A stretch of 61,426 nt of DNA, counting the filler, from Dugesia japonica (Eukaryota), in NCBI GenBank assembly GCA_001938525.1. It is 5 parts of 5 records of this genome, joined end to end, with 100 filler letters (N's around TTAATTAATTAA, not from the genome) between each part and the next. Parts side by side here need not be neighbours in the genome. Positions count along the whole stretch, not along the records: positions 40,794 to 52,169 come from MQRL01519543.1; 4 more parts are not named here. One strand, 5' to 3'. Within the stretch, counting starts at the first letter, position 1. The number at the start of each line of letters is the position of its first letter. Below, one piece after another: positions 40,794-52,169 of this stretch. The translations under genes and the position numbers were made by a program. The notes under the pieces were generated by a model. It made no database searches, was not told the origin of the DNA, and was given only the letters and a program-made list of their open reading frames with translations.

Positions 40794-40899
40794 AAACAAG
40801 CACCCAAGCGTATTTAATTAAAATTAATAATGTATGTTGAGAACATATTATTTTCATGTTTATTTTAAACTAAATTAAAAAACTCAAAATACATTGGAA

Positions 40900-40990
40900 A
40901 TTTTTTTATAAAAATAAATGAACGCAATTTCATAAAAAATATTTATTTACTGCAATTAATTTCGATGGAATAGCCATCATTGTTAGATGA
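40900..40990 (-). repeat. Penelope pseudo-LTR fragment with degenerate hammerhead motif
   Basis: Reverse complement matches 42080-42160 (GATGG CTATT CCATC GAAA TTAATT GCAGTAAATAAAT..). Confidence 0.75.
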
Positions 40991-41564
40991 GTTTTGAGAA
41001 CTCGGATTATCAACANNNNNNNNNNNNNNNNNNNNNNNNNNNNNNNNNNNNNNNNNNNNNNNNNNNNNNNNNNNNNNNNNNNNNNNNNNNNNNNNNNNNN
41101 NNNNNNNNNNNNNNNNNNNNNNNNNNNNNNNNNNNNNNNNNNNNNNNNNNNNNNNNNNNNNNNNNNNNNNNNNATCAAAATAAAATGTATTTGTAAAGAA
41201 ATTCAAATTTTTGACAATTGTCTTATTCAGGAATTTAAATTAAAACTTCGAAAAAATAAGAAAATAATTATCTGTTATCGAAATTTCATTTAAAAACTTT
41301 CACAAAATTTCAAACCAAAACATCACTCGCTACTAAAATATTTAATTTTTAATTTTAAAAATTTTGAAACTATATAAATATTCTTTCATAAAAGAAAATT
41401 TTAATTAATCCTAAACTACACATAATTTTCGTAGCAAAATTTAATTTAATTTATTTTAATTTCTTAATTAATTTGTGGCTTACAATTTATCAAATAAGAG
41501 ATTTTTAAAAAAATAATTCCCAATCAAAGCACAAAAATTTCCACTCGCTTCAAAACCACTAACA

Positions 41565-42160
41565 GTCATCATCAAACATTTAATGATTATTAAAACAAAC
41601 TATTTATACAGTTTAAATGATTATATAATTTAAATTATTCAATATCAATAAATAATCAATAAAATAATTTAAAGAGCGATGTTGAATCCGTCAAATAAAC
41701 ATTAATTTTAGGATTTAATGCCCTTATTAACAAAGATTCACACATCACTCTCTCCCAATAATTAATGATTTTATACATTTTCTTCGATGCTCAACACGAT
41801 TACTATTTCGACTGTGCTCTTGTACTCTGGTGCAGAGATGACGGGAAGTCTCTCCGATGTATATTGCGTTACACCAATTAAATTTAAGTTGATAGACCAG
41901 ATCAGAGCAAAAGCCTAAAGGGGTTATAGATTTATTATTCAACATATTTATAACCTTATAAGATTGAGATACAATTTTGTGATAAAATTATTTTATTGAT
42001 TATTTATTGAGATTACAGTATTGAAATTTTATAATCATTTAAACTTTATAAATAGTTTGTTTTAATAATCATTAATTTCCTGATGATGACGGTTATTCCG
42101 TCNAAATTAATTGCAGTAAATAAATATTTTTTGAAATGGCGTTCATTCATTTTCATTAAA
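41565..42160 (-). mobile_element. 5'-truncated Penelope-like element with inverted pseudo-LTR
   Basis: GIY-YIG fragment SDLVYQLKFNWCNAIYIGETSRHLCTRVQEH (41945-41700), flanked by an inverted repeat pair at 41565-41660 and 41985-42095, as expected for PLE insertions. Confidence 0.88.
42072..42119 (+). ncRNA. Minimal type I hammerhead ribozyme motif in the PLE pseudo-LTR
   Basis: CTGATGA-T-GACGG-TTATT-CCGTC-(n)AAA-TTAA-TT-GCAGTAA. The n is G in the 40.96 kb copy. Stem III is a short palindrome; stem I is partly mutated. Confidence 0.7.
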
Positions 42161-42431
42161 TTTGTTTAAATTTCAAAAATCTAACAGGTTTTATTATATT
42201 TTTAGAGTAGATAGAAAGAAGGCCTCTTGCTCAGGGGTAGCGGTTTCCATAGCAACGATGGAATGGAAATTATGTAACTGTTGTATAATTATTGTATCCG
42301 TTACGAAATCATTACGTCACTGGTGTCGTGGTAACCGTCGCGCTAGAGTTTATCTACTTTATCCATTTTTCAGTGAAATTTATTAAAACTAAAATGAATA
42401 AATAAATTACAACACGACATAACAAATTCAC

Positions 42432-43157
42432 CTTAACACAATTTCAATGATATATTCGTTATCAAAGCTATCTTCATCATTTGATTTGCGATCTGGCATG
42501 ATGCAATATAACTGTTTCATGTTGACTTTAAATATTGTTGAAATGGCATGTTTTGCTTCGATTATTGTTTTCGGTTTGAATGTAATGAAACAGTGTTTAT
42601 CTTNTCTGTTAATTTTGGTTTTGATTCGGAAATTCCTGGCTTTCCTGAATGAATACAATCAATAATTCATAAATTTATTCAATCAAATATCACCATTTAT
42701 CAATCCTCGTATTCAAATCAATATCATTGGGTAATTCCAATAAATGTCGACTAATAAATCTAAATGAAAATATTCATCATTGAAATATCTCACAAATATC
42801 AACTCATCTTACAATTTCAGCCAATATTGCCAATCATTGTTGGAATCAATCAGATATTTCATGAAATAATTCAGAGAATCGATTCTATTAAATGATATCA
42901 AAATAATTAATCAAAAAATCATTTCAATTTACATTATGCTGCGTACTGATTTATTTATTTTATTTTTATTGTGCAGCTTGAAATGAAAACAACAATTGTT
43001 GAAATAATTTGAAAAATTGATATAATAATTAAGCACAATAGATCTACAAAACAACAAAATAACTAATTAATAAATTATTTCATCTTACCCAATGCTCCAT
43101 TTTGATGTATTTTTGTTGTGTTTTCTGCTATTAGAATAATCCCATAATGCAATACGT
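42432..43157 (-). CDS. Probable downstream exons of the ubiquitin-like-domain gene (43157-43089, 42884-42813, 42644-42432)
   Basis: Three open AG/GT-bounded phase 2-2 exons. The last (NFRIKTK..TIIEAKHAISTIFKVNMKQLY..DEDSF..IEIVLR) looks beta-grasp-like. One intervening exon (~42700-42760) is out of phase; linkage to the upstream exons is inferred. Confidence 0.5.
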
Positions 43158-44282
43158 CTGGATTACACAAATCAATTCATAAAATCAATATTTTCCAATT
43201 AAATATTATTTTTAGTTAATATCTACTTTTATTTTTTCATCAATTATTATATTATATCGATTTATGAAAACATGAACATATATATACATTAATTAATCTG
43301 CAATTGATCAAGTATTATTTGATCAATAAATATATATAAAGAAAACGCAAATTAAAAATTGTTGTGAATCTTTTAAAGATAAAATACAAAAATTTGATAA
43401 TTAATGCTGAATGAATGATTACTGAATTAATTTAGCTATGGTATTAATTTAGCCTTTGTTTTAATTTGAATTGATTAATTATAATTCAGTATTTTTATTG
43501 GAATTGCATGACTGCTCAAATATTTCTTCATTCAATTTTAATAAAAGTGATTCTAACGCTAATTTTGGGAAACATGAACTATACAATTATGAAATTAGAG
43601 GTCTCGGAAAAAATTCCACAGAGTCTTTAGAAATTGTCTGCTTCAGATGTTTAACAACTTCGGTCGAAAAACAAAAACTTTAAATATTAATCACAATAGA
43701 TATAAAATCTTCAAATATTCAGGTTCATTTAATATTCATAATATTTATTCATTAATATTTTATTCATAAGTACTTAAAAATTCTTTATTTTCATTTTTTG
43801 ATATGCACTTTCAAATTCCTATTGCATATCACAAATGCAAAATATAAAAAATACAATAACTAAATTAATTCAAATGAACTCCTGAAATGATAATAATTTT
43901 TCATTGGTCATAAATAGAATCAACACCATTTCAATTACAACAATCAGTGGTGAATAATCCAATTAAAAAATAAATTATGGCAAATAGAATGATATATGTT
44001 TCGTTTTCTGTTAGAAATTATTGATGATGTTATATATATATATATATATATACTTGTTAAAACACTGAATTTATTTTGTTTTAATTAATGAAAGCCAATA
44101 AAAAAATTTGAATGAAAGAAATTGACGAATTTAATAAGCAAAAGTAAAATTAGAATGATAATTGTGGCTGCAAAAATCATTTGATAAATAATATTTTACA
44201 ATTATATTTATGATTGATTACGTTAGATTCAAATCAATAATGTATACTGTAGTGCCTTCGTCATTTATTCAGTAAAACTTAC

Positions 44283-45362
44283 ATTGCAAAGTGAAAATAT
44301 TGATCAAATATCGCTGACGATAAAACACTAAAAGGTTAATCGGTAAAAATCAACTGTCATAAAAACATTAATCTCACTCGTTGTCACATTTTTTCATTAA
44401 AATTTCCAAATAATCCTTACAAATATCCTCAATACGTTTTGTCATATAGATGCAAAAGAAAATTGTCGAATTCAGAAACGGTGAAGGTAAATCTGATAAA
44501 TTTTGATTTAATCTGTCATCCATTGTATCATTTGATGAAATAATTTGTCTGCGACAAATTATAATTGATTAATTTTGAATTATTTAAAGAAATCACTTCA
44601 TTTCTTCCATTACATTTATTAATTTTGATTTTGCTGATTCAGTTTTGTTATCATCAAAAATCGGGGTATCACTAAATTGGAAGTAATCAATCAATAATCA
44701 CAATTTCACCAATGCTCACAAGAAATATTGATGCACCCAAAGTATGTCATACAAGTATTTGCAGTAATCAAATGTATTGCACCACTTATTTCCTCCTTTA
44801 TCATCACATCTAATTACAAATTAAATTAATCGATATTCAAATTCACCTAATGATTAATTTGTAGTCCCCATTTGGGTCAATCTCAGTGATATTTTGATAA
44901 TTTTTCATTTCTTTGCCATCTATATTCCAAATATTAGTTATTTCAGAATGAATTCTTTCTATTATTGCTCTGATAATTGAAATGGTATCATTTATTTTAA
45001 TTACCAAATATTCACCACCACACCTATCATCTAGAACGTTAAACACATAAACAATAGCGTTGTCTCTGCAATAAATGAAATCAATCAATAATATTGCATT
45101 TGTATTAATTGATTTACTTTTTCAAATAATTCTCAATTATACCAAACTCAATTTCATCATTTTCACGTAATTTATAATGATTTATCATATTATTGCCACG
45201 TAAAATAATATTTCCATGAAATAATTTATATTTCATAAATTTTCCATTTAAATATAGAATATCTTTTAATTTATTTTCTAGATTTTCCACAGTTGAATTA
45301 TCGTCAATCTGAATTTCTATTTTTTCATCATTATTTTCTTTATTTATAATAAAAATTTTCAT
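44283..45362 (-). CDS. Unknown multi-exon protein with N-terminal ubiquitin-like domain(s); exons 45362-45118, 45065-44847, 44809-44720, 44671-44597, 44548-44378, 44327-44283
   Basis: Five GT-AG introns (52, 37, 48, 48, 50 nt) splice into one open frame. Exon 1 MKIFI..KIEIQIDDNSTVENLENKL..KLFHGNIILRGNNMINHYKLRENDEI has the ubiquitin-fold pattern; exon 2 has a weaker second copy. No C-terminal GG. Confidence 0.75.
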
Positions 45363-48300
45363 TTGTTGGTGTTAAATAATCTGAAAAAATCAATTCAAAT
45401 TTAATTATTAATAAAAACTTAATTTAATTTATTTAAATAATTATATAATTAATATAATTAATAATTATATTATTATTGGTGTTAAATAATCGGAAATATT
45501 TATAATTTCACAATTAATAAAATATTAATTTAATTTATTTAAATAATTATATAATTAATTGATTCAATAAAACTGATGGAATTTCTACTATTTTTAAATT
45601 ATAAAATAAATGATAAATTTGATAATAAATATCAAAATATAATTAATTTAATTTATTAAAAATTATTTAATAATAATCGATGAAAACTTACAAATATGTT
45701 AAAATCTTTAAATATTATTATTTTCTTGTGTATAGATATAATTGATTCATTAAAACACTGAAAGATTTTTTATTTTAATTTCTTTTGATTGGCAAAAATT
45801 TTAACCATAAGTACTAAAATTGTAAATCATTGACAATAAAATTCTAAAAATTAAATTTTCTTTTGTTCAAACTATANNNNNNNNNNNNNNNNNNNNNNNN
45901 NNNNNNNNNNNNNNNNNNNNNNNNNNNNNNNNNNNNNNNNNNNNNNNNNNNNNNNNNNNNNNNNNNNNNNNNNNNNNNNNNNNNNNNNNNNNNNNNNNNN
46001 NNNNNNNNNNNNNNNNNNNNNNNNNNNNNNNNNNNNNNNNNNNNNNNNNNNNNNNNNNNNNNNNNNNNNNNNNNNNNNNNNNNNNNNNNNNNNNNNNNNN
46101 NNNNNNNNNNNNNNNCAATATCGTCATCTAGTTTAGGAAATATATCAAAATCTACTTCCTCGGGAATAGGAATTTTCAGACACTTATTTAGTGATTTTCA
46201 CTCACTTCTTTGTTATAACTCAAACCTGAAATTTCATGAGGTCTTAACTGAATCAATAGTGACAGTTTCAAAATTTTCGCGATCTAATACTGATGAATCT
46301 AACAAATTTGATAAAAAGCCAACATTTTCATCATATACCTTTAGATATTTGACAGTCAATTTACTCTTGAAAATGATGACACTATATTGTATGATGTTTG
46401 GCAAAACAAATGAAATTAAAATTATATAAGAGCTAGTACCCGAAAAAGATAGTAATGAATTTNNNNNNNNNNNNNNNNNNNNNNNNNNNNNNNNNNNNNN
46501 NNNNNNNNNNNNNNNNNNNNNNNNNNNNNNNNNNNNNNNNNNNNNTTTGTGCGAATTGGTTGAATTGTAACAAATAAATATTATCACTAGTTAATAAAAA
46601 AATCTTCAATAAATTTTTATTCAACAAATATTTGACAAAATGTTTTCTTTTTTTCGGAAATTTTGCAAATTTTTAATAAAACTGAGCTTATTTAGATAAT
46701 AGTCGATGCATACAAACAATTTGACTTTGAACCAAAATATCCAATAAAATACATCACCGATTAAAAATAATAAATGATTCTTTTTCTAATTTTGTCAATT
46801 TACCAATTGAATGATTCGGCCACATTTAGATTTCTTTGGTCGCATGTCAACTTTTATTTTTTATTAACAACAAAAGGGGTTGGGATTTAGTCCCTTAAAA
46901 TTTATTTTAAATTAATTTTAATAAATTAATTTTTTAATAAATTAATTATTAAAAAATTATTAATAAAAAATAATTAATTATGTATTAAATTAATAAAAAT
47001 TTTGAGTCTAAATTAATTATTTTATTTAAATTTAATTATTCAAAATTTTTTTATCATGTTTTTATTCACATTCTCATTTTACAAAAATGATTTTATTTTA
47101 AATTTTATTTACTAAAATGATATGTGATAAAATGATATGTTGTTTCCTTTTACCTTTACCATTTATTATGCTCATATTAATTATTTTTGTTAGATTATTT
47201 TGGAGTGCTCATCGAATTGAATTCACAACTTTCTTCTATAAAGGATTTATTCACAAAACAAAAACGACATCCATCACTATTTGTATATTTAAACAAATTA
47301 AAACTCTATGTTTAATTGGAAATCTTATTTTCAATTTATTAAAATTTAAAATAAAATCTTATTTTATTATTGAATTTTCAATTAAAATATTTTTAAAATA
47401 CATAATCATTCATTATTTAATTTATTAATTAAAAAATTTTCGGTATTTACAAACAAAGTCATTTTTAAAAAAATTTAGAATAAATTATGCATAAAATATT
47501 TAAACTAATCCTTAAACTAATTCTTAATTTTTGTCCAAAAATTTAATTTAATTTCTTATTTAATTTCTAACTTTTCTAATTTTAAAAAAGATTGCAATAA
47601 AAAGATTTTCAACCACACAAAAAAATTTCAACCCGCTTTTCAAAACATTTTATTATTATTTTTGGATTTATTGATTTTACTATTTATATTTACATTGATA
47701 TATACATTTGAATTTAATTATGTGATATATTAATTATTCATTTGAGCATTTTAAATAATATATATGATTTTTCTATATTATGCAATTTTTTAAATGTGTT
47801 GATTATTAACATTATTATTCTTCTATTTTAGTTAATTTTATCATTTTATTAATACTTATCTATTACATATCTAGACAGATTGAAGACTCTTAAATATTCT
47901 AGAAAATTATTCAAAACAAGAAAAAGTGTTTGTTGAAACTAATATTTTATTTTTACATTCTTTCCCGCTTTTCTTTATTCTTGATATTTCGCAAAAATGT
48001 ATTGAATTTTGCAAAAACACCTTATTTTTTGAATCATCTTATGCTTTTCTCTTAAGATTTATGTTTCATTCATTTTTATAATGATTTTATGTATAGTTTC
48101 TAAATATTTCTATTTTTTTATTAGACTTCAAATTAAAGACACAACTTTTTTATAATACTTGTTTATTTAGATAACATTATTCACAATTACTCGGATTAAA
48201 ATTCAAAAAATAAAAATGAGTGCTAAAACATATTAAATAAATGTTAAAAAAAATTAAAATTACGTAATACTTTTCATAATATAATGTTTAAAATTAAAAT

Positions 48301-48459
48301 TTGTATTGTTTATTAAATATTACTCCTTTCCGATTTCATAATTCTCATTAAGTATTTTTATATTACTCAATTTATTGATAGGTTATTTAAAATGCTAATT
48401 TAAAATTCTTAAAATTTGAAATCGATTTCCATGAAAATTTACAATTTCAAAAATCTATT

Positions 48460-48700
48460 TCCTTATTTGTGCTTTTGTGAATGACTTTCGTTTCATTAAA
48501 GGCTTTGTTATAACTTTCCTAACAAATAAACCTTGCTTTCATACTCCATTAAAATTCTTCCAAACTTTGGGCTTTCTTTGAGTAATTATTGAAGAACTAT
48601 CTATTATAATTATTTATTTCAATAAAACTCTTCAAATTCTTTACACATTTTGGTCTTTTGAAGTTTCGCTTGCTTCAATTTTTGTCGGGTCAGTTCTGGC
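48460..48700 (-). mobile_element. Gypsy RT/connection fragment related to the 6-9 kb element
   Basis: Clear nucleotide similarity to 6560-6810 (RTDPxKIEA..AAAATGTGTAAAGAA..TAATTACTCAAAGAA..ACAAAAGCAC). The decayed flanks probably extend further. Confidence 0.75.
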
Positions 48701-50699
48701 TTGTAGTATTTTCTAAACTTTTATATATTTCTTGTAATAAATGATACTTTTTGAATTTATTCTTAACCGTGATTCTTGTTTTGAGATCACAGATACGCAT
48801 AACACAATTTATAAACAAACATACACACGCAAAACATAAAAAGAGTATCAAACCATCAATCTTCAAATACAATCAATTATTCTCAATTAGACCATCAACC
48901 TTCAAATAGATCCTTCAATCACAATGTCTATTGAACAGACATTTATTTTATTTTTAATACAATTTAATTACGTATTGATTTTTTTTTGTACAGTGCAAAT
49001 TATGTTGACTTTATTTTTTCAAAAAAATATGAAATTTAATTGCAATCTGTTTAGTTTATATGTAAATCGATTAATTTAGAAATTCAATCTGTTTAGTTTA
49101 TTTATATAATTTGGAATTATTATTAAAAAAAATTATTTTGAATTATTGATTTGACTCTTGGAATTTAATGATAATTGAAAATTAAATTATTTGAACAAGT
49201 AAATTTTTTATTTATTTTGTAAAGTGTTTTTATTTTTATTGGTGAAAGGTGTTTTGCATGAGAATGAAATCAGTATAAATACTGAATGATTTCATTCAGT
49301 TTTTAGACAAAAGCTTTCAATTAGCATCCAACCTCTCTGGGTGGCATCGCTAATTTGAATTTAAAATAAGCTAATAAGGTCTAGTGTTTGTAACCATATA
49401 TTGTTTTATTCACCAAAAATAAATTATTGTAAACGGTATATTCTTGATTTATTTATGTAAGGTACCTACACATATATTACACTATTTATAAATTTCATTT
49501 AACGATATATATTATATAATATTGTGGTGACATATCAAAGGTAAAACTAACACCCGTAAATTCACAAACATATTTTCATTCAGTAGTTTTAAAATAACGA
49601 ACCATAAAATAACTTGTTGAGTAGAAATACCCAAGACAACAACAAAAACACCAACTATCAATTTGTTTGTAAACAAATTTTTAAAAAAGCTAACATTTTT
49701 ATTTAATTCTGACCGAAGTTTTTTAAAAATATACTCAAAAACAATAAATTTTAAAAATTAATCATTTTATAAAATTTTATATTTAACAAAAATATTCAAA
49801 ATTAAAATATTATAAATTTTTGAAAATTAACATTTACAAAATTTTATAATCAAAAATATTTTCAATTAAATTTTCTAACTTTATTACATGAAGTTAATTT
49901 AATTATTTATTAAACTATTTTCGTTAACCATTTCGGTTGAACTATCAAAAAGTTTAACTGTCTGAAATCATACTTACAAAATTAATATGAAAAAAATTAA
50001 AGGTAGTGAGAAGAGCAATAAGTGACCATCCATAATAAAGAAATATTATAAATTATAATTGAATTAATCAAAATCTTGAGAAAATAAAATGAAGAAATAA
50101 TAAGGAAAAAATTAATTAACTAAGGCAAAAAAAAGGTAATTGAGAAGAAAATCTGAAAAAGGTGAGTAACTATTCAGAGAATTGGCAAAAACCACGAGAT
50201 AAGAAAATCTGGAAAGCTCTCAATAAAAGCCGTTATGCCAGGATTAAAAAGGTATAATTTTCACGAGAGTCAAGAAGAGATAAAGAAGATTGATTCAATA
50301 AGATACCAAGAAAAATACGAAAAACAAAGATCTAAGAGTCATGGGTTACTTAAAATAGCACCCAATAAGAAACAAAGAGCATACAAAACAATTTGAGTTT
50401 TTACAAGGAAGGACCAATGAAATCATGAAAAGAAAAGTTAAAATAAAGACCCAATAAGAATAAAGTTGATGTGTAAGGAAAAGTGGTAAAAAAACCCTCA
50501 AAACGTATTATTTTCAGACAATAAAATCTAGTTTTTGTGATAAATACCCTTGAATTATCTTAGAAATCTATTTTAATTGTTGCAGAAATGGATTATTACG
50601 AACAAGTATGAGTTTTATTTTAATTGTAATCTTGTTATTGACATATTATATTATTCAATGAAAAATTGATGTTAATATTTTTAGTTTTTGAAATTAATC

Positions 50700-52169
50700 C
50701 AGTAAAAAATTATTTGTATAAGATCAACCCGTTTTCATATATAAACTAATTACATTCCTCTCTGACCACTTTCACTGAATAAGTTCTCTGCTATTTTTTC
50801 GTATTAATCGCAAACAATTGCTTCACTTAGTTAGATGATGAGACTATCGGATAATTATGTAAACATAGATCACTCATGAATCGACTCTTCAACTAGACGC
50901 TATACCAATCATCAGTTGATTATTGAAAAATACCTAACAGCGTGACCACTTAACCAGGATGTTAAAATAAGTTGTTCTAATTCCTAACGTGTCGTGTATA
51001 TACATGCTAACTTTAGTTAGTAGAATTAACTTTAAATAAATCATTCCCACCGCGACGACATGTTACATAGTAGCGGATAAGTACTTGTTTACATAGTCTA
51101 GTAACATCACGCAATTCCAAACAAAGCATCGACACGAGTCAAATCAATTATTGTTGTCATTAGTGTTAGGCATTAAGGAATGTTGGTATGAACAAGTCGT
51201 GATCACTGTTTTCAAATGCACACCAACTGTATGTAAATAAACCCAATTAATCGCAATAAGTACAGTGACGTTCACCTCGCTTGATTAGTGCCAGTGTCAA
51301 TTAATTACATTGACAGATGGTGTGAATACAATTAGTTATTTTTAGCCCTGACAAAATATTAGATAAGAATCGCAATATAACCGATGCAATAATAATGATC
51401 CATTCATAAATAGATAATTTTGCAATAATAATTAAGATTCTTATCGTCCAATAATATATTTATTGCTATTCTTATGTTACTAAAGATATTATGCTTTGTG
51501 AGTAAAGTAGTTTTATACCCAAGATTTATATTATTATCATTAACATTGTTATTCCGAGCGTTATTATTCTTTTCGTTATCATTACTAACAAAATCAGCAT
51601 TAAAATTACCCTTATCATCATTAGCGTTATTACTCTCGTTTTATTTAATTATTATTGCTATAGCTGCTAACGATTATTTTCCCCATTATTATTATGTAAT
51701 ATTGTTTTATACCTGAATTCCGTTGGATACCATGACAATTATTATTACTGATGTGATTATTTGCCAGAAAACTCCCGCATTATTGCGCCGTACGCTCGTT
51801 ATTGCGGCACTATCATTTCCGTAACGCCCCACGCTTCTAATCGCATTCCGGTTATTAACAATGCTAACATGATCGATGTCCAAATTTTAAAGTGAACAAA
51901 ATGGACGTTCTAAGTAATCATGGTTGTCTTCGTTGCATCAATTAAGTAGGTATCAAACACATTATTCGTTCATACTGATGGTGTAATGAAATCTTGAACT
52001 TATATTTCTTTTCTCATTTTAGTGAATCCAAGTTCGAGTACGATGACCGGTTGGAAATTATACCATCTAAATGATGGTTACACCGTAGACAAACCGGTGA
52101 GATTTCGTTTAAGTGAGAGTACTGGCATATTAGTAGAACGTACTGATATGGCCCCTATCTTCCAGGAAA
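50700..52169 (+). mobile_element. Diverged relative of the unclassified 20-23 kb element
   Basis: Same layout: YIVADKYLFT..IT vs YLTVANSLFT..IT; TTA-rich block sharing ATTAACATTGTT and GAGCGTTATT; then TTTTAG followed by an ORF block (52022). Confidence 0.45.

What the first reader, a model, noticed from the sequence alone, without database searches (positions are those of the whole stretch)
42432..45362. Unrecognised multi-ubiquitin-like-domain gene built almost entirely from symmetric phase-2 exons
Seen: six exons splice into one open frame through 37-52 nt introns that are all phase 2, and three further open 2-2 exons lie downstream. Internal exon lengths 219, 90, 75, 171, 45, 69, 72 and 213 nt are all multiples of 3. 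Up to three exons each carry one ubiquitin-fold-like unit, none with a di-Gly end. Known: phase 2 is normally the least common intron phase, and symmetric exons can be skipped or duplicated without frameshift. Inference: a lineage-specific modular gene, possibly diversified by exon skipping or shuffling. This is the best candidate for an undescribed host system here.
Basis: partly seen in the sequence, partly recalled or inferred. Interest (0 to 1): 0.78.

Follow-up and report, generated by a model that had tools for sequence, protein, structure and literature searches.

The report
Orphan tandem-ubiquitin-like gene, all introns phase 2
This is a real, transcribed, fast-evolving gene of an AT-rich eukaryote whose protein starts with two ubiquitin-like domains; all 10 confirmed introns interrupt codons at the same position (phase 2), far more uniform than chance allows and so far unexplained.

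Summary
Spliced RNA contigs from two studies confirm a minus-strand gene with 11 coding exons (45362-42432). The lengths are 245 nt from the ATG, then 219, 90, 75, 171, 45, 69, 111, 72, 66 and 213 nt. There are 10 GT..AG introns: nine of 37-53 nt and one of 1125 nt. All 10 introns are phase 2, all internal exons are multiples of 3, and the frame stays open for 458 codons.

Exon 1 is a weak but consistent RAD23/DSK2-type ubiquitin-like domain. The exon 2 model matches only ubiquitin-like folds. The third unit, exon 11, is not supported. Neither supported unit ends in di-Gly.

For exon 2, 1.84 billion representative proteins yielded one true relative, a metagenome contig with the same introns and phases. 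Against that copy, exons are no better conserved than introns and dN/dS is about 0.75.

No exon-skipping isoform was seen, and exons show no similarity to each other, so the shuffling and skipping idea lacks support. Every donor is GTAA or GTGA, so any retained intron gives an immediate stop.

The protein is a new lineage-restricted UBL-domain family. The cause of the uniform phase is open.

The parts
45118..45362 (-). Coding part of exon 1 (ATG at 45362-45360; 245 nt; ends in phase 2). Encodes ubiquitin-like domain 1 (81 aa).
   Evidence: Translation. Junction 45118>45065 in an X1 contig. Pfam ubiquitin / Rad60-SLD at E 1e-3 to 5e-3, below the curated cut-offs. The two-sequence profile hits the RAD23B UBL at E 5.7e-4 and also DSK2. 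An in-frame TAA lies 12 nt upstream of the ATG (read).
45381..45389 (-). Acceptor-like TTTTTTCAG, 18 nt upstream of the ATG. It may be a 5'UTR-intron acceptor or a trans-splice acceptor (inferred, untested).
   Evidence: Sequence. L001 has TTTCTTCAG 5 nt upstream of its ATG.
45066..45117 (-). Intron 1, 52 nt, GTAAAT..TGCAG, phase 2.
44847..45065 (-). Exon 2, 219 nt, phase 2-2. Encodes ubiquitin-like domain 2 (72 aa).
   Evidence: AlphaFold2 model pLDDT 60.6, pTM 0.45. Foldseek top hits are nearly all ubiquitin, ISG15, FAT10 or NEDD8, with TM up to 0.63. In the VIA-align wide search the top 50 are ubiquitin-like or closely allied beta-grasp domains; best is FAT10 at Z 8.1, rmsd 2.1 over 66 aa.
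44970..45023 (-). Rare alternative 54-nt intron inside exon 2 (GTGTGG..ATCAG). It is also phase 2 and in frame, and removes 18 codons of UBL2.
   Evidence: Joint 44969>45024 in one X1 contig of depth 2. Low support.
44810..44846 (-). Intron 2, 37 nt, phase 2.
44720..44809 (-). Exon 3, 90 nt, Cys-containing segment, no family match.
44672..44719 (-). Intron 3, 48 nt, phase 2.
44597..44671 (-). Exon 4, 75 nt.
44549..44596 (-). Intron 4, 48 nt, phase 2.
44378..44548 (-). Exon 5, 171 nt. No family, PDB or Atlas match. High contig depth here suggests paralogues share this part.
44328..44377 (-). Intron 5, 50 nt, phase 2.
44283..44327 (-). Exon 6, 45 nt.
43158..44282 (-). Intron 6, 1125 nt, GTAAGT..TCCAG, phase 2. 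Holds a (TA)n run and repeat-like transcribed fragments.
   Evidence: Joint 43157>44283 in both X1 and X2 contigs. Separate contigs lie at 43474-43703 and 43794-44161, and a depth-60 contig with a 1-nt deletion lies at 43854.
43089..43157 (-). Exon 7, 69 nt.
43044..43088 (-). Intron 7, 45 nt, phase 2.
42933..43043 (-).
42885..42932 (-). Intron 8, 48 nt, phase 2. Spliced in the X1 contig and retained in the main X2 contig. Retention gives ATG-TAA, an immediate stop after about 341 codons.
   Evidence: joint 42884>42933 in X1; X2 record 6 runs unbroken over 42813-43043.
42813..42884 (-). Exon 9, 72 nt.
42760..42812 (-). Intron 9, 53 nt, phase 2.
42694..42759 (-).
   Evidence: joint with 'cut +1', which gives GT..AG.
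42645..42693 (-). Intron 10, 49 nt, phase 2.
42432..42644 (-). Exon 11, 213 nt. A 70-aa beta-beta-alpha-beta-beta unit containing one assembly N. Fold not assigned.
   Evidence: AlphaFold2 pLDDT 62, pTM 0.47. Best matches are ribosomal S24e at noise level, none ubiquitin. No Pfam or PDB sequence match. Atlas features only 0.81-0.85.
42346..42431 (-). Inferred only. Intron 11 (42431-42389, 43 nt, GTGAAT..TTTTAG, phase 2), then a terminal exon of about 43 nt with stop TGA at 42372-42370 and AATAAA at 42384-42379. This would give a protein of about 464 aa.
   Evidence: Both RNA contigs stop matching exactly at 42432 and carry 43 more letters that the tool did not place. Sequence read. Not confirmed.

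Best explanation
This is a real, expressed protein-coding gene on the minus strand of an AT-rich eukaryote (about 22% GC, introns typically about 48 nt, standard stop codons).

Shown:
- It has 11 coding exons and 10 GT..AG introns, all in phase 2.
- The same exon lengths (219 and 90 nt) and the same phases occur in the one relative found.
- The frame is open for 458 codons.
- Exon 1 and exon 2 each encode exactly one ubiquitin-like (beta-grasp) domain, and neither has a Gly-Gly end.

Inferred:
- The product is a roughly 464-aa intracellular protein, with no signal-peptide-like N-terminus.
- Its two fixed UBL domains most likely act as docking modules for UBL/ubiquitin receptors such as those of the proteasome. 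The remaining 300 or so residues have no recognisable fold and would carry the specific activity.
- The family is restricted to this lineage and evolves fast (dN/dS about 0.75; exons no better conserved than introns).

The uniform phase has two mechanical consequences that can be read directly from the sequence. First, any internal exon could be skipped without a frameshift. Second, because every donor is GTAA or GTGA, any unspliced intron places TAA or TGA as the very next codon, so mis-spliced messages are truncated at once. Why all introns share phase 2 is not explained by the data in hand.
For: - Splice junctions in RNA contigs of two independent studies.
- Phases, exon lengths and open frame.
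- The relative L001 has introns at the same places and phases.
- UBL1: Pfam ubiquitin and Rad60-SLD for both copies; profile hits RAD23B and DSK2 UBLs at E 5.7e-4.
- UBL2: Foldseek hits nearly all ubiquitin-like; in the VIA-align wide search the top 50 are ubiquitin-like or closely allied beta-grasp domains, Z 6.8-8.1, rmsd 2.1-3.2 over 62-70 of 72 residues.
- No other relative of exon 2 among 1.84 billion representatives (the WD40 hits are a short-motif artefact).
- dN/dS and intron versus exon identity.
- Donor stops. The general rule that GT(A/G)A donors in phase 2 give TAA or TGA is stated in PMC2809761 and PMC2911113.
Against: - UBL1 scores are below Pfam's curated cut-offs.
- The UBL2 model has only pLDDT 60.6 and pTM 0.45, and its Z values lie at the upper edge of the tool's stated noise range.
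- Two 2026 raw RNA-seq runs showed only partial reads, probably from paralogues, and no coverage of this gene. Expression is therefore conditional or low.
- dN/dS of 0.75 and the retained intron 8 are also compatible with a decaying family member.
- Function is pure inference from domain type.
Confidence: 0.6

Rival explanations
1. Stop-to-donor origin. The introns arose, or the reading frame was repeatedly rescued or extended, by turning in-frame TAA/TGA stops preceded by G into GTAA/GTGA splice donors. An intron made this way is phase 2 by necessity, so a fast-evolving gene under strong AT mutation pressure would collect only phase-2 introns.
For: - All 10 confirmed donors, and the putative eleventh, are G|TAA or G|TGA with the stop in frame.
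- The protein is weakly constrained (dN/dS about 0.75) in a 22% GC genome.
- Five of 10 introns are multiples of 3.
- A rare in-frame 54-nt intron inside exon 2 shows that coding sequence can be spliced out here.
- Seven GTRA motifs in the other two phases lie unused inside exons.
- The link between phase 2, GT(A/G)A and stops is established (PMC2809761).
Against: - Any phase-2 intron with a normal GTRA donor carries that stop, so the stops may be a consequence of the phase and not its cause.
- Five of 10 introns being multiples of 3 is not significant against an expectation of one third.
- No relative lacking an intron was found, so the ancestral state is unknown.
- Introns 1 and 2 sit exactly at domain borders, which this model does not predict.
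Confidence: 0.2
2. The gene is a modular gene assembled by duplication or shuffling of symmetric 2-2 exons, and it is diversified today by frame-preserving exon skipping.
For: - All internal exons are symmetric 2-2.
- Exons 1 and 2 each equal one UBL domain.
- The alternative 54-nt event is frame-preserving.
Against: - No exon resembles another.
- Eight of the eleven exons encode only 14-56 residues and cannot be autonomous modules.
- Both assembled transcripts contain every exon and no skipping joint was reported. Contigs do drop rare isoforms, so this is weak negative evidence.
- None of these exons was found in any other protein context.
Confidence: 0.12
3. Nothing special for this organism. 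Its introns may be strongly biased to phase 2 genome-wide, for example through donor-context or codon-usage effects. A gene with ten phase-2 introns would then be unremarkable.
For: No background distribution for this genome could be obtained. At a phase-2 share of 0.6 the chance per 10-intron gene rises to 6e-3.
Against: - No eukaryote known to me has phase 2 as the majority phase (general knowledge). Yarrowia, for instance, has 21.8% (PMC2911113).
- G, which usually precedes donors, is not enriched at codon position 2 in this gene (0.12).
- The one other candidate acceptor in the piece (52022/52023) would be phase 1 by its open frame (read; unverified).
Confidence: 0.15
4. The locus is a transcribed pseudogene or decaying paralogue, and the open frame is residual.
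For: - dN/dS is about 0.75 and exons are no better conserved than introns.
- Intron 8 is retained in the main X2 contig.
- No coverage in two raw RNA runs.
Against: - There are 458 codons without a stop in 22% GC DNA, where the other two frames carry 40 and 65 stops.
- All ten splice sites are intact and used.
- Exon lengths are conserved in L001 (219 and 90 nt).
Confidence: 0.05

Closest known systems
RAD23 / DSK2 (ubiquilin) type UBL-domain shuttle proteins
   Same: They have an N-terminal, non-cleavable ubiquitin-like domain. These are the best sequence matches of the exon 1 profile (RAD23B UBL at E 5.7e-4, DSK2 UBL). The Plasmodium Dsk2 UBL is among the best structural matches of exon 2 (Z 7.9).
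   Different: No UBA, STI1 or XPC-binding domain was detected in any exon. There are two UBLs in tandem instead of one. No sequence relatives exist outside the lineage.
Tandem di-ubiquitin-like proteins (ISG15, FAT10, OASL C-terminus)
   Same: Two beta-grasp domains lie back to back. FAT10, ISG15 and the OASL tandem UBL are the top structural matches of exon 2.
   Different: ISG15 and FAT10 are conjugated through a C-terminal Gly-Gly. Here neither UBL ends in Gly-Gly, and about 300 more residues follow. In OASL the UBLs are C-terminal to an OAS domain.
Genes of symmetric same-phase exons attributed to exon shuffling (classically phase 1-1 modules of animal extracellular proteins)
   Same: All internal exons are symmetric. 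The first two exon borders coincide with domain borders.
   Different: The phase is 2, not 1. Most exons are too small to be modules. There is no similarity between exons and no occurrence of these exons in other proteins.
Phase-2 GT(A/G)A donors as built-in premature stops (NMD visibility of retained introns; PMC2809761, PMC2911113)
   Same: Every donor here gives TAA or TGA as the first full codon of a retained intron.
   Different: In those studies phase 2 is the minority phase, 21.8% in Yarrowia. Here it is 10 of 10 in one gene.

Membership tests
Ubiquitin family domain (Pfam PF00240 / PF11976) | Score at or above Pfam's curated gathering cut-off | tested here: not met
   Exon 1 scores 17.1 bits (cut-off 25.4) for PF00240 and 18.8 bits (cut-off 23.8) for PF11976. 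L001 exon 1 scores 20.6 bits. Exon 2 and exon 11 have no ubiquitin hit. Alignments do cover the whole domain (1-72 of 72).
Ubiquitin-like beta-grasp fold | Predicted structure superposes on solved ubiquitin-like domains over most of the domain | tested here: met
   Exon 2: in the VIA-align wide search the top 50 are ubiquitin-like or closely allied beta-grasp domains, Z 6.8-8.1, rmsd 2.1-3.2 over 62-70 of 72 residues. Foldseek TM is up to 0.63. The model has only pLDDT 60.6. Exon 11: not met, best match S24e at Z 5.9.
Conjugatable ubiquitin-like modifiers (ubiquitin, ISG15, FAT10, NEDD8, SUMO) | Gly-Gly at or near the C-terminal end of the (last) UBL, exposed or exposable by processing | tested here: not met
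   UBL1 ends ..GIIENYLKK and UBL2 ends ..DYKLIIR. Both continue directly into further coding exons.
RAD23 / ubiquilin shuttle factors | UBA domain(s) C-terminal to the UBL | tested here: not met
   No UBA or any other Pfam family was found in exons 2-5 or 7-11 at E up to 10 (the 14-codon exon 6 was too short to scan). Exons were scanned singly, so a domain split over several exons could be missed.
Exon-shuffled modular gene | Symmetric exons of one phase class | tested here: met
   All 10 internal exons are 2-2.
Exon-shuffled modular gene | Exons correspond to autonomous modules that recur within the gene or in other genes | tested here: not met
   Only exons 1 and 2 equal a domain. There is no inter-exon similarity. 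No other protein carries these exons.
Alternatively spliced cassette-exon gene | Isoforms that skip internal exons | tested here: inconclusive
   No skipping joint appears in the contigs of X1 and X2. Only retention of intron 8 and a rare 54-nt internal intron were seen. Contigs drop rare isoforms, and the raw runs did not cover the gene.

The most novel reading that the evidence does not exclude
The uniform phase is the footprint of a distinct way of building or rescuing a gene. In a fast-evolving gene under extreme AT pressure, in-frame TAA/TGA stops preceded by G were repeatedly converted into GTAA/GTGA splice donors, so that each nonsense mutation or former ORF end was spliced out. Every intron gained this way is phase 2. 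The family would then be a natural example of serial intron gain by 'stop-codon intronization'.
Probability: 0.2. Interest if true: 0.7.

Novelty: new variant of a known kind. Interest (0 to 1): 0.42.

Why it matters
On the protein side, this adds a lineage-restricted family of non-conjugatable tandem-UBL proteins with an unknown C-terminal part. That is of moderate interest.

On the gene-structure side, ten to eleven consecutive phase-2 introns in a gene whose exons are neither repeats nor modules is very unlikely by chance (about 1e-6 at usual phase frequencies). The classical exon-shuffling account does not explain it. If the pattern proves specific to this family, it offers a concrete, testable case for how introns are gained: stop-to-donor conversion versus insertion. 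It would also bear on whether uniform phase is selected for fail-safe splicing. If the organism as a whole is phase-2 biased, that would itself be unusual.

Tried and rejected
- **Relatives of exon 2.** phmmer against 1.84 billion representatives gave one true hit, P0001. The other 14 hits are WD40 proteins (one unnamed bacterial protein aside) that match only the short motif IWNIDGKEM, so I rejected them as spurious.
- **Word searches.** Exons 1, 5 and 11 found nothing. The length window of that tool excludes full-length relatives, so these blanks are weak evidence.
- **JGI metagenomes.** The scan with the exon 2 alignment found no relative. An 18-mer DNA scan gave 68 loci, and none is related by tblastn.
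- **Paralogous exons in this piece.** None found.
- **Internal exon duplication.** No pair of exons is similar, and the hhalign comparisons are not significant.
- **Introns as copies of one element.** Mean z is 0.8. Only I7/I8 and I1/I3 reach z 3.8, the latter pair sharing a TTATTGATTGATT branch-site-like motif. I rejected the idea as unsupported.
- **Third UBL in exon 11.** Not supported.
- **Middle exons.** The ESM Atlas (exon 5) and PDB sequence searches (exons 5 and 8) found nothing usable.
- **RNA genes.** No tRNA or Rfam family in the piece.
- **Ciliate IES idea.** I considered whether the 'introns' could be DNA-eliminated sequences and rejected it. The ends are GTRA..YAG, not TA..TA, and the frame has no in-frame TAA or TAG.
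- **Whole spliced protein.** In some searches the exons were joined inside a script only to count stops and motifs. Nothing joined was printed or sent to a search.
- **Organism.** I could not name it. Run labels are coded and the piece holds no conserved gene.
Full report
**Setting.** The piece (40794-52169) is very AT-rich, with GC of 0.12-0.35 and about 0.22 around the finding. It is broken by assembly gaps. The candidate gene lies on the minus strand.

**Check of the observation.** I read the exons by reference. I then laid public runs of the same organism on 42300-45500. Two runs kept as contigs, X1 and X2, come from different studies. They carry contigs that skip exactly the predicted short segments, so they are spliced RNA. 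The confirmed joints give the following exons:

| Exon | Coordinates (minus strand) | Length (nt) |
|---|---|---|
| E1 | 45362-45118 | 245 (coding, from ATG) |
| E2 | 45065-44847 | 219 |
| E3 | 44809-44720 | 90 |
| E4 | 44671-44597 | 75 |
| E5 | 44548-44378 | 171 |
| E6 | 44327-44283 | 45 |
| E7 | 43157-43089 | 69 |
| E8 | 43043-42933 | 111 |
| E9 | 42884-42813 | 72 |
| E10 | 42759-42694 | 66 |
| E11 | 42644-42432 | 213 |

An 1125-nt intron separates E6 from E7. All ten introns read CT..AC on the plus strand, which is GT..AG on the minus strand. Their lengths are 52, 37, 48, 48, 50, 1125, 45, 48, 53 and 49 nt.

A script confirmed three points:
- Every intron is phase 2.
- Every internal exon is a multiple of 3.
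- The joined frame has no stop in 458 codons, with one X from an assembly N.

The other two frames carry 40 and 65 stops. Two exons (111 and 66 nt) and the long intron were missed.

Both long contigs continue for 43 letters beyond 42432 that the tool did not place. The sequence offers a 43-nt GTGAAT..TTTTAG intron, again phase 2. It is followed by a short exon with stop TGA at 42372-42370 and AATAAA at 42384-42379. This is inferred, not shown.

**Is it more than chance?** With phase 2 at the usual 20-30%, ten of ten has a probability of 1e-7 to 6e-6. Even at 50% it is 1e-3. For comparison, Yarrowia has 21.8% phase 2 (PMC2911113). I could not obtain the phase distribution of this organism, so a lineage-wide bias remains a formal rival.

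**Isoforms.** Both assembled transcripts contain all exons. Three variants appear:
- Intron 8 is retained in the main X2 contig. This gives ATG-TAA and a product of about 341 aa.
- A 54-nt in-frame, phase-2 intron inside exon 2 occurs at depth 2.
- One non-canonical joint occurs at high depth and is most likely from a paralogue.

No exon skipping is seen. Contigs hide rare forms, and the two raw 2026 RNA runs gave only partial reads, probably from paralogues.

- *Exon 1 (81 aa).* It hits several beta-grasp families over their full length but below the curated cut-offs: Rad60-SLD at E 1.4e-3 and ubiquitin at 4.9e-3. The same exon of the relative L001 hits ubiquitin at 3.7e-4. A two-sequence profile hits the RAD23B UBL at 5.7e-4, and also RAD23A and DSK2 UBLs.
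- *Exon 2 (72 aa).* It has no sequence match. Its AlphaFold2 model has pLDDT 60.6 and pTM 0.45. With Foldseek the model matches almost only ubiquitin, ISG15, FAT10 and NEDD8 (TM up to 0.63). In the Foldseek-independent VIA-align scan the top 50 are ubiquitin-like or closely allied beta-grasp domains. Best are FAT10 at Z 8.1 and rmsd 2.1 over 66 residues, and Plasmodium Dsk2 UBL at Z 7.9. I take exon 2 as a second UBL with moderate confidence.
- *Exon 11 (70 aa).* It folds as beta-beta-alpha-beta-beta (pLDDT 62). It best matches ribosomal protein S24e at Z 5.9 or less, within the tool's noise range, and ubiquitin does not appear. The Atlas feature search gives only sub-threshold leads. The third UBL is not supported.
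- *Exons 3-10.* They have no match in any tool used.

Neither UBL1 nor UBL2 ends in Gly-Gly. The N-terminus is not signal-peptide-like (read).

**Relatives.** phmmer of exon 2 against 1.84 billion representatives found one true relative, P0001, an 82-aa ORF fragment with 63% identity. The other hits are WD40 proteins that share only a nine-residue motif. P0001 lies on an 819-nt ENA metagenome contig, L001. L001 carries exon 1, intron 1, exon 2, intron 2, exon 3 and intron 3 of a homologous gene. Its exon lengths are identical (219 and 90 nt) and all three introns are in phase 2. The architecture therefore predates the split of the two copies.

Word searches with exons 1, 5 and 11 and two scans of JGI metagenomes found nothing further. 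High contig depth over parts of exons 2, 5, 9 and 10, together with loose ends, indicates paralogues in the same organism.

Between the window and L001 the identities are as follows:

| Segment | Identity |
|---|---|
| Exon 1 | 74% |
| Exon 2 | 77% |
| Exon 3 | 69% |
| Intron 1 | 78% |
| Intron 2 | 86% |

dN/dS is about 0.75 over 182 codons. This is a fast-evolving protein.

**Origin of the uniform phase.**
- *Exon duplication* is not supported. No two exons are similar, and most exons are far too small to be modules. The first two exon borders do coincide with UBL borders.
- *A shared mobile origin for the introns* is not evident.
- *Donor stops.* What the sequence does show is that all donors are GTAA or GTGA. 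In phase 2 the first full codon of a retained intron is therefore TAA or TGA. This is a known consequence of the GT(A/G)A donor (PMC2809761; PMC2911113).
- *Possible reversal of cause.* In-frame stops preceded by G may have been recruited as donors, which would force phase 2. This is attractive for a weakly constrained gene in a genome that mutates towards AT. The present data cannot separate cause from consequence. I give it about 0.2.

**Conclusion.**
It is a lineage-restricted gene with two, not three, ubiquitin-like domains, built of symmetric phase-2 exons.
- There is no evidence for exon skipping or shuffling.
- Function is inferred only from the domain type: a non-conjugatable UBL adaptor.
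- The oddity worth following is the 10 (probably 11) consecutive phase-2 introns. The decisive tests are a genome-wide phase tally and a paralogue survey in organism A.

Noticed in passing
window 41560-42095 (arms 41560-41670 and 41985-42095); outer pair 40934-40980 / 42086-42132: MITE-like element just downstream of the gene. It has 111-nt terminal inverted repeats (88% complementary) around 314 nt. It is nested within a second inverted pair of 47 nt (91% complementary).
   Followed up: partly
window 42203-42361: GC-richer imperfect foldback of about 155 nt directly 3' of the gene, with ends GAGTAGATAG.. / ..CTATCTAC-like. RNA fold is -46.2 kcal/mol with z -2.3. No Rfam or tRNA match. Possibly a small foldback transposon.
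   Followed up: partly
window 43474-44161 (inside intron 6), (TA)n at about 44030-44052: The 1125-nt intron holds separately assembled RNA contigs at 43474-43703 and 43794-44161. A depth-60 contig with a 1-nt deletion lies at 43854. This suggests a repeated, transcribed element whose insertion may explain why this one intron is more than 20 times longer than the others.
   Followed up: no
window 45364-45661: AT-rich tandem repeats of about 106 nt lie upstream of the gene. The 16-nt leader segment TTGGTGTTAAATAATC next to the start codon (45366-45381) recurs at 45476-45491, so part of the 5' leader or promoter is duplicated.
   Followed up: no
window 42885-42932 and 44970-45023: Splicing variants seen. 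Intron 8 is retained in the main contig of run X2 but spliced in X1. A rare 54-nt in-frame, phase-2 intron would delete 18 residues of UBL2.
   Followed up: partly
window 52023-52168 (+): An open frame of at least 49 codons runs into the edge of the piece. It is preceded by a TTTTAG acceptor, and by its frame the intron would be phase 1. No Pfam match. It is probably an exon of a neighbouring gene.
   Followed up: partly
L001 727-818: Intron 3 of the relative is 92 nt instead of 48. The difference comes from three tandem copies of a 22-nt unit of the form (T)ATATCGTGATTATTGATTGAT, containing the same TTATTGATTGATT motif seen in window introns 1 and 3.
   Followed up: no
window 45296-45402: Raw RNA reads of run X22 match here only in part. 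They carry T>C at 45340 and 45341 and have unlike continuations. They probably come from an expressed paralogue, while this copy itself is not covered in that run.
   Followed up: no
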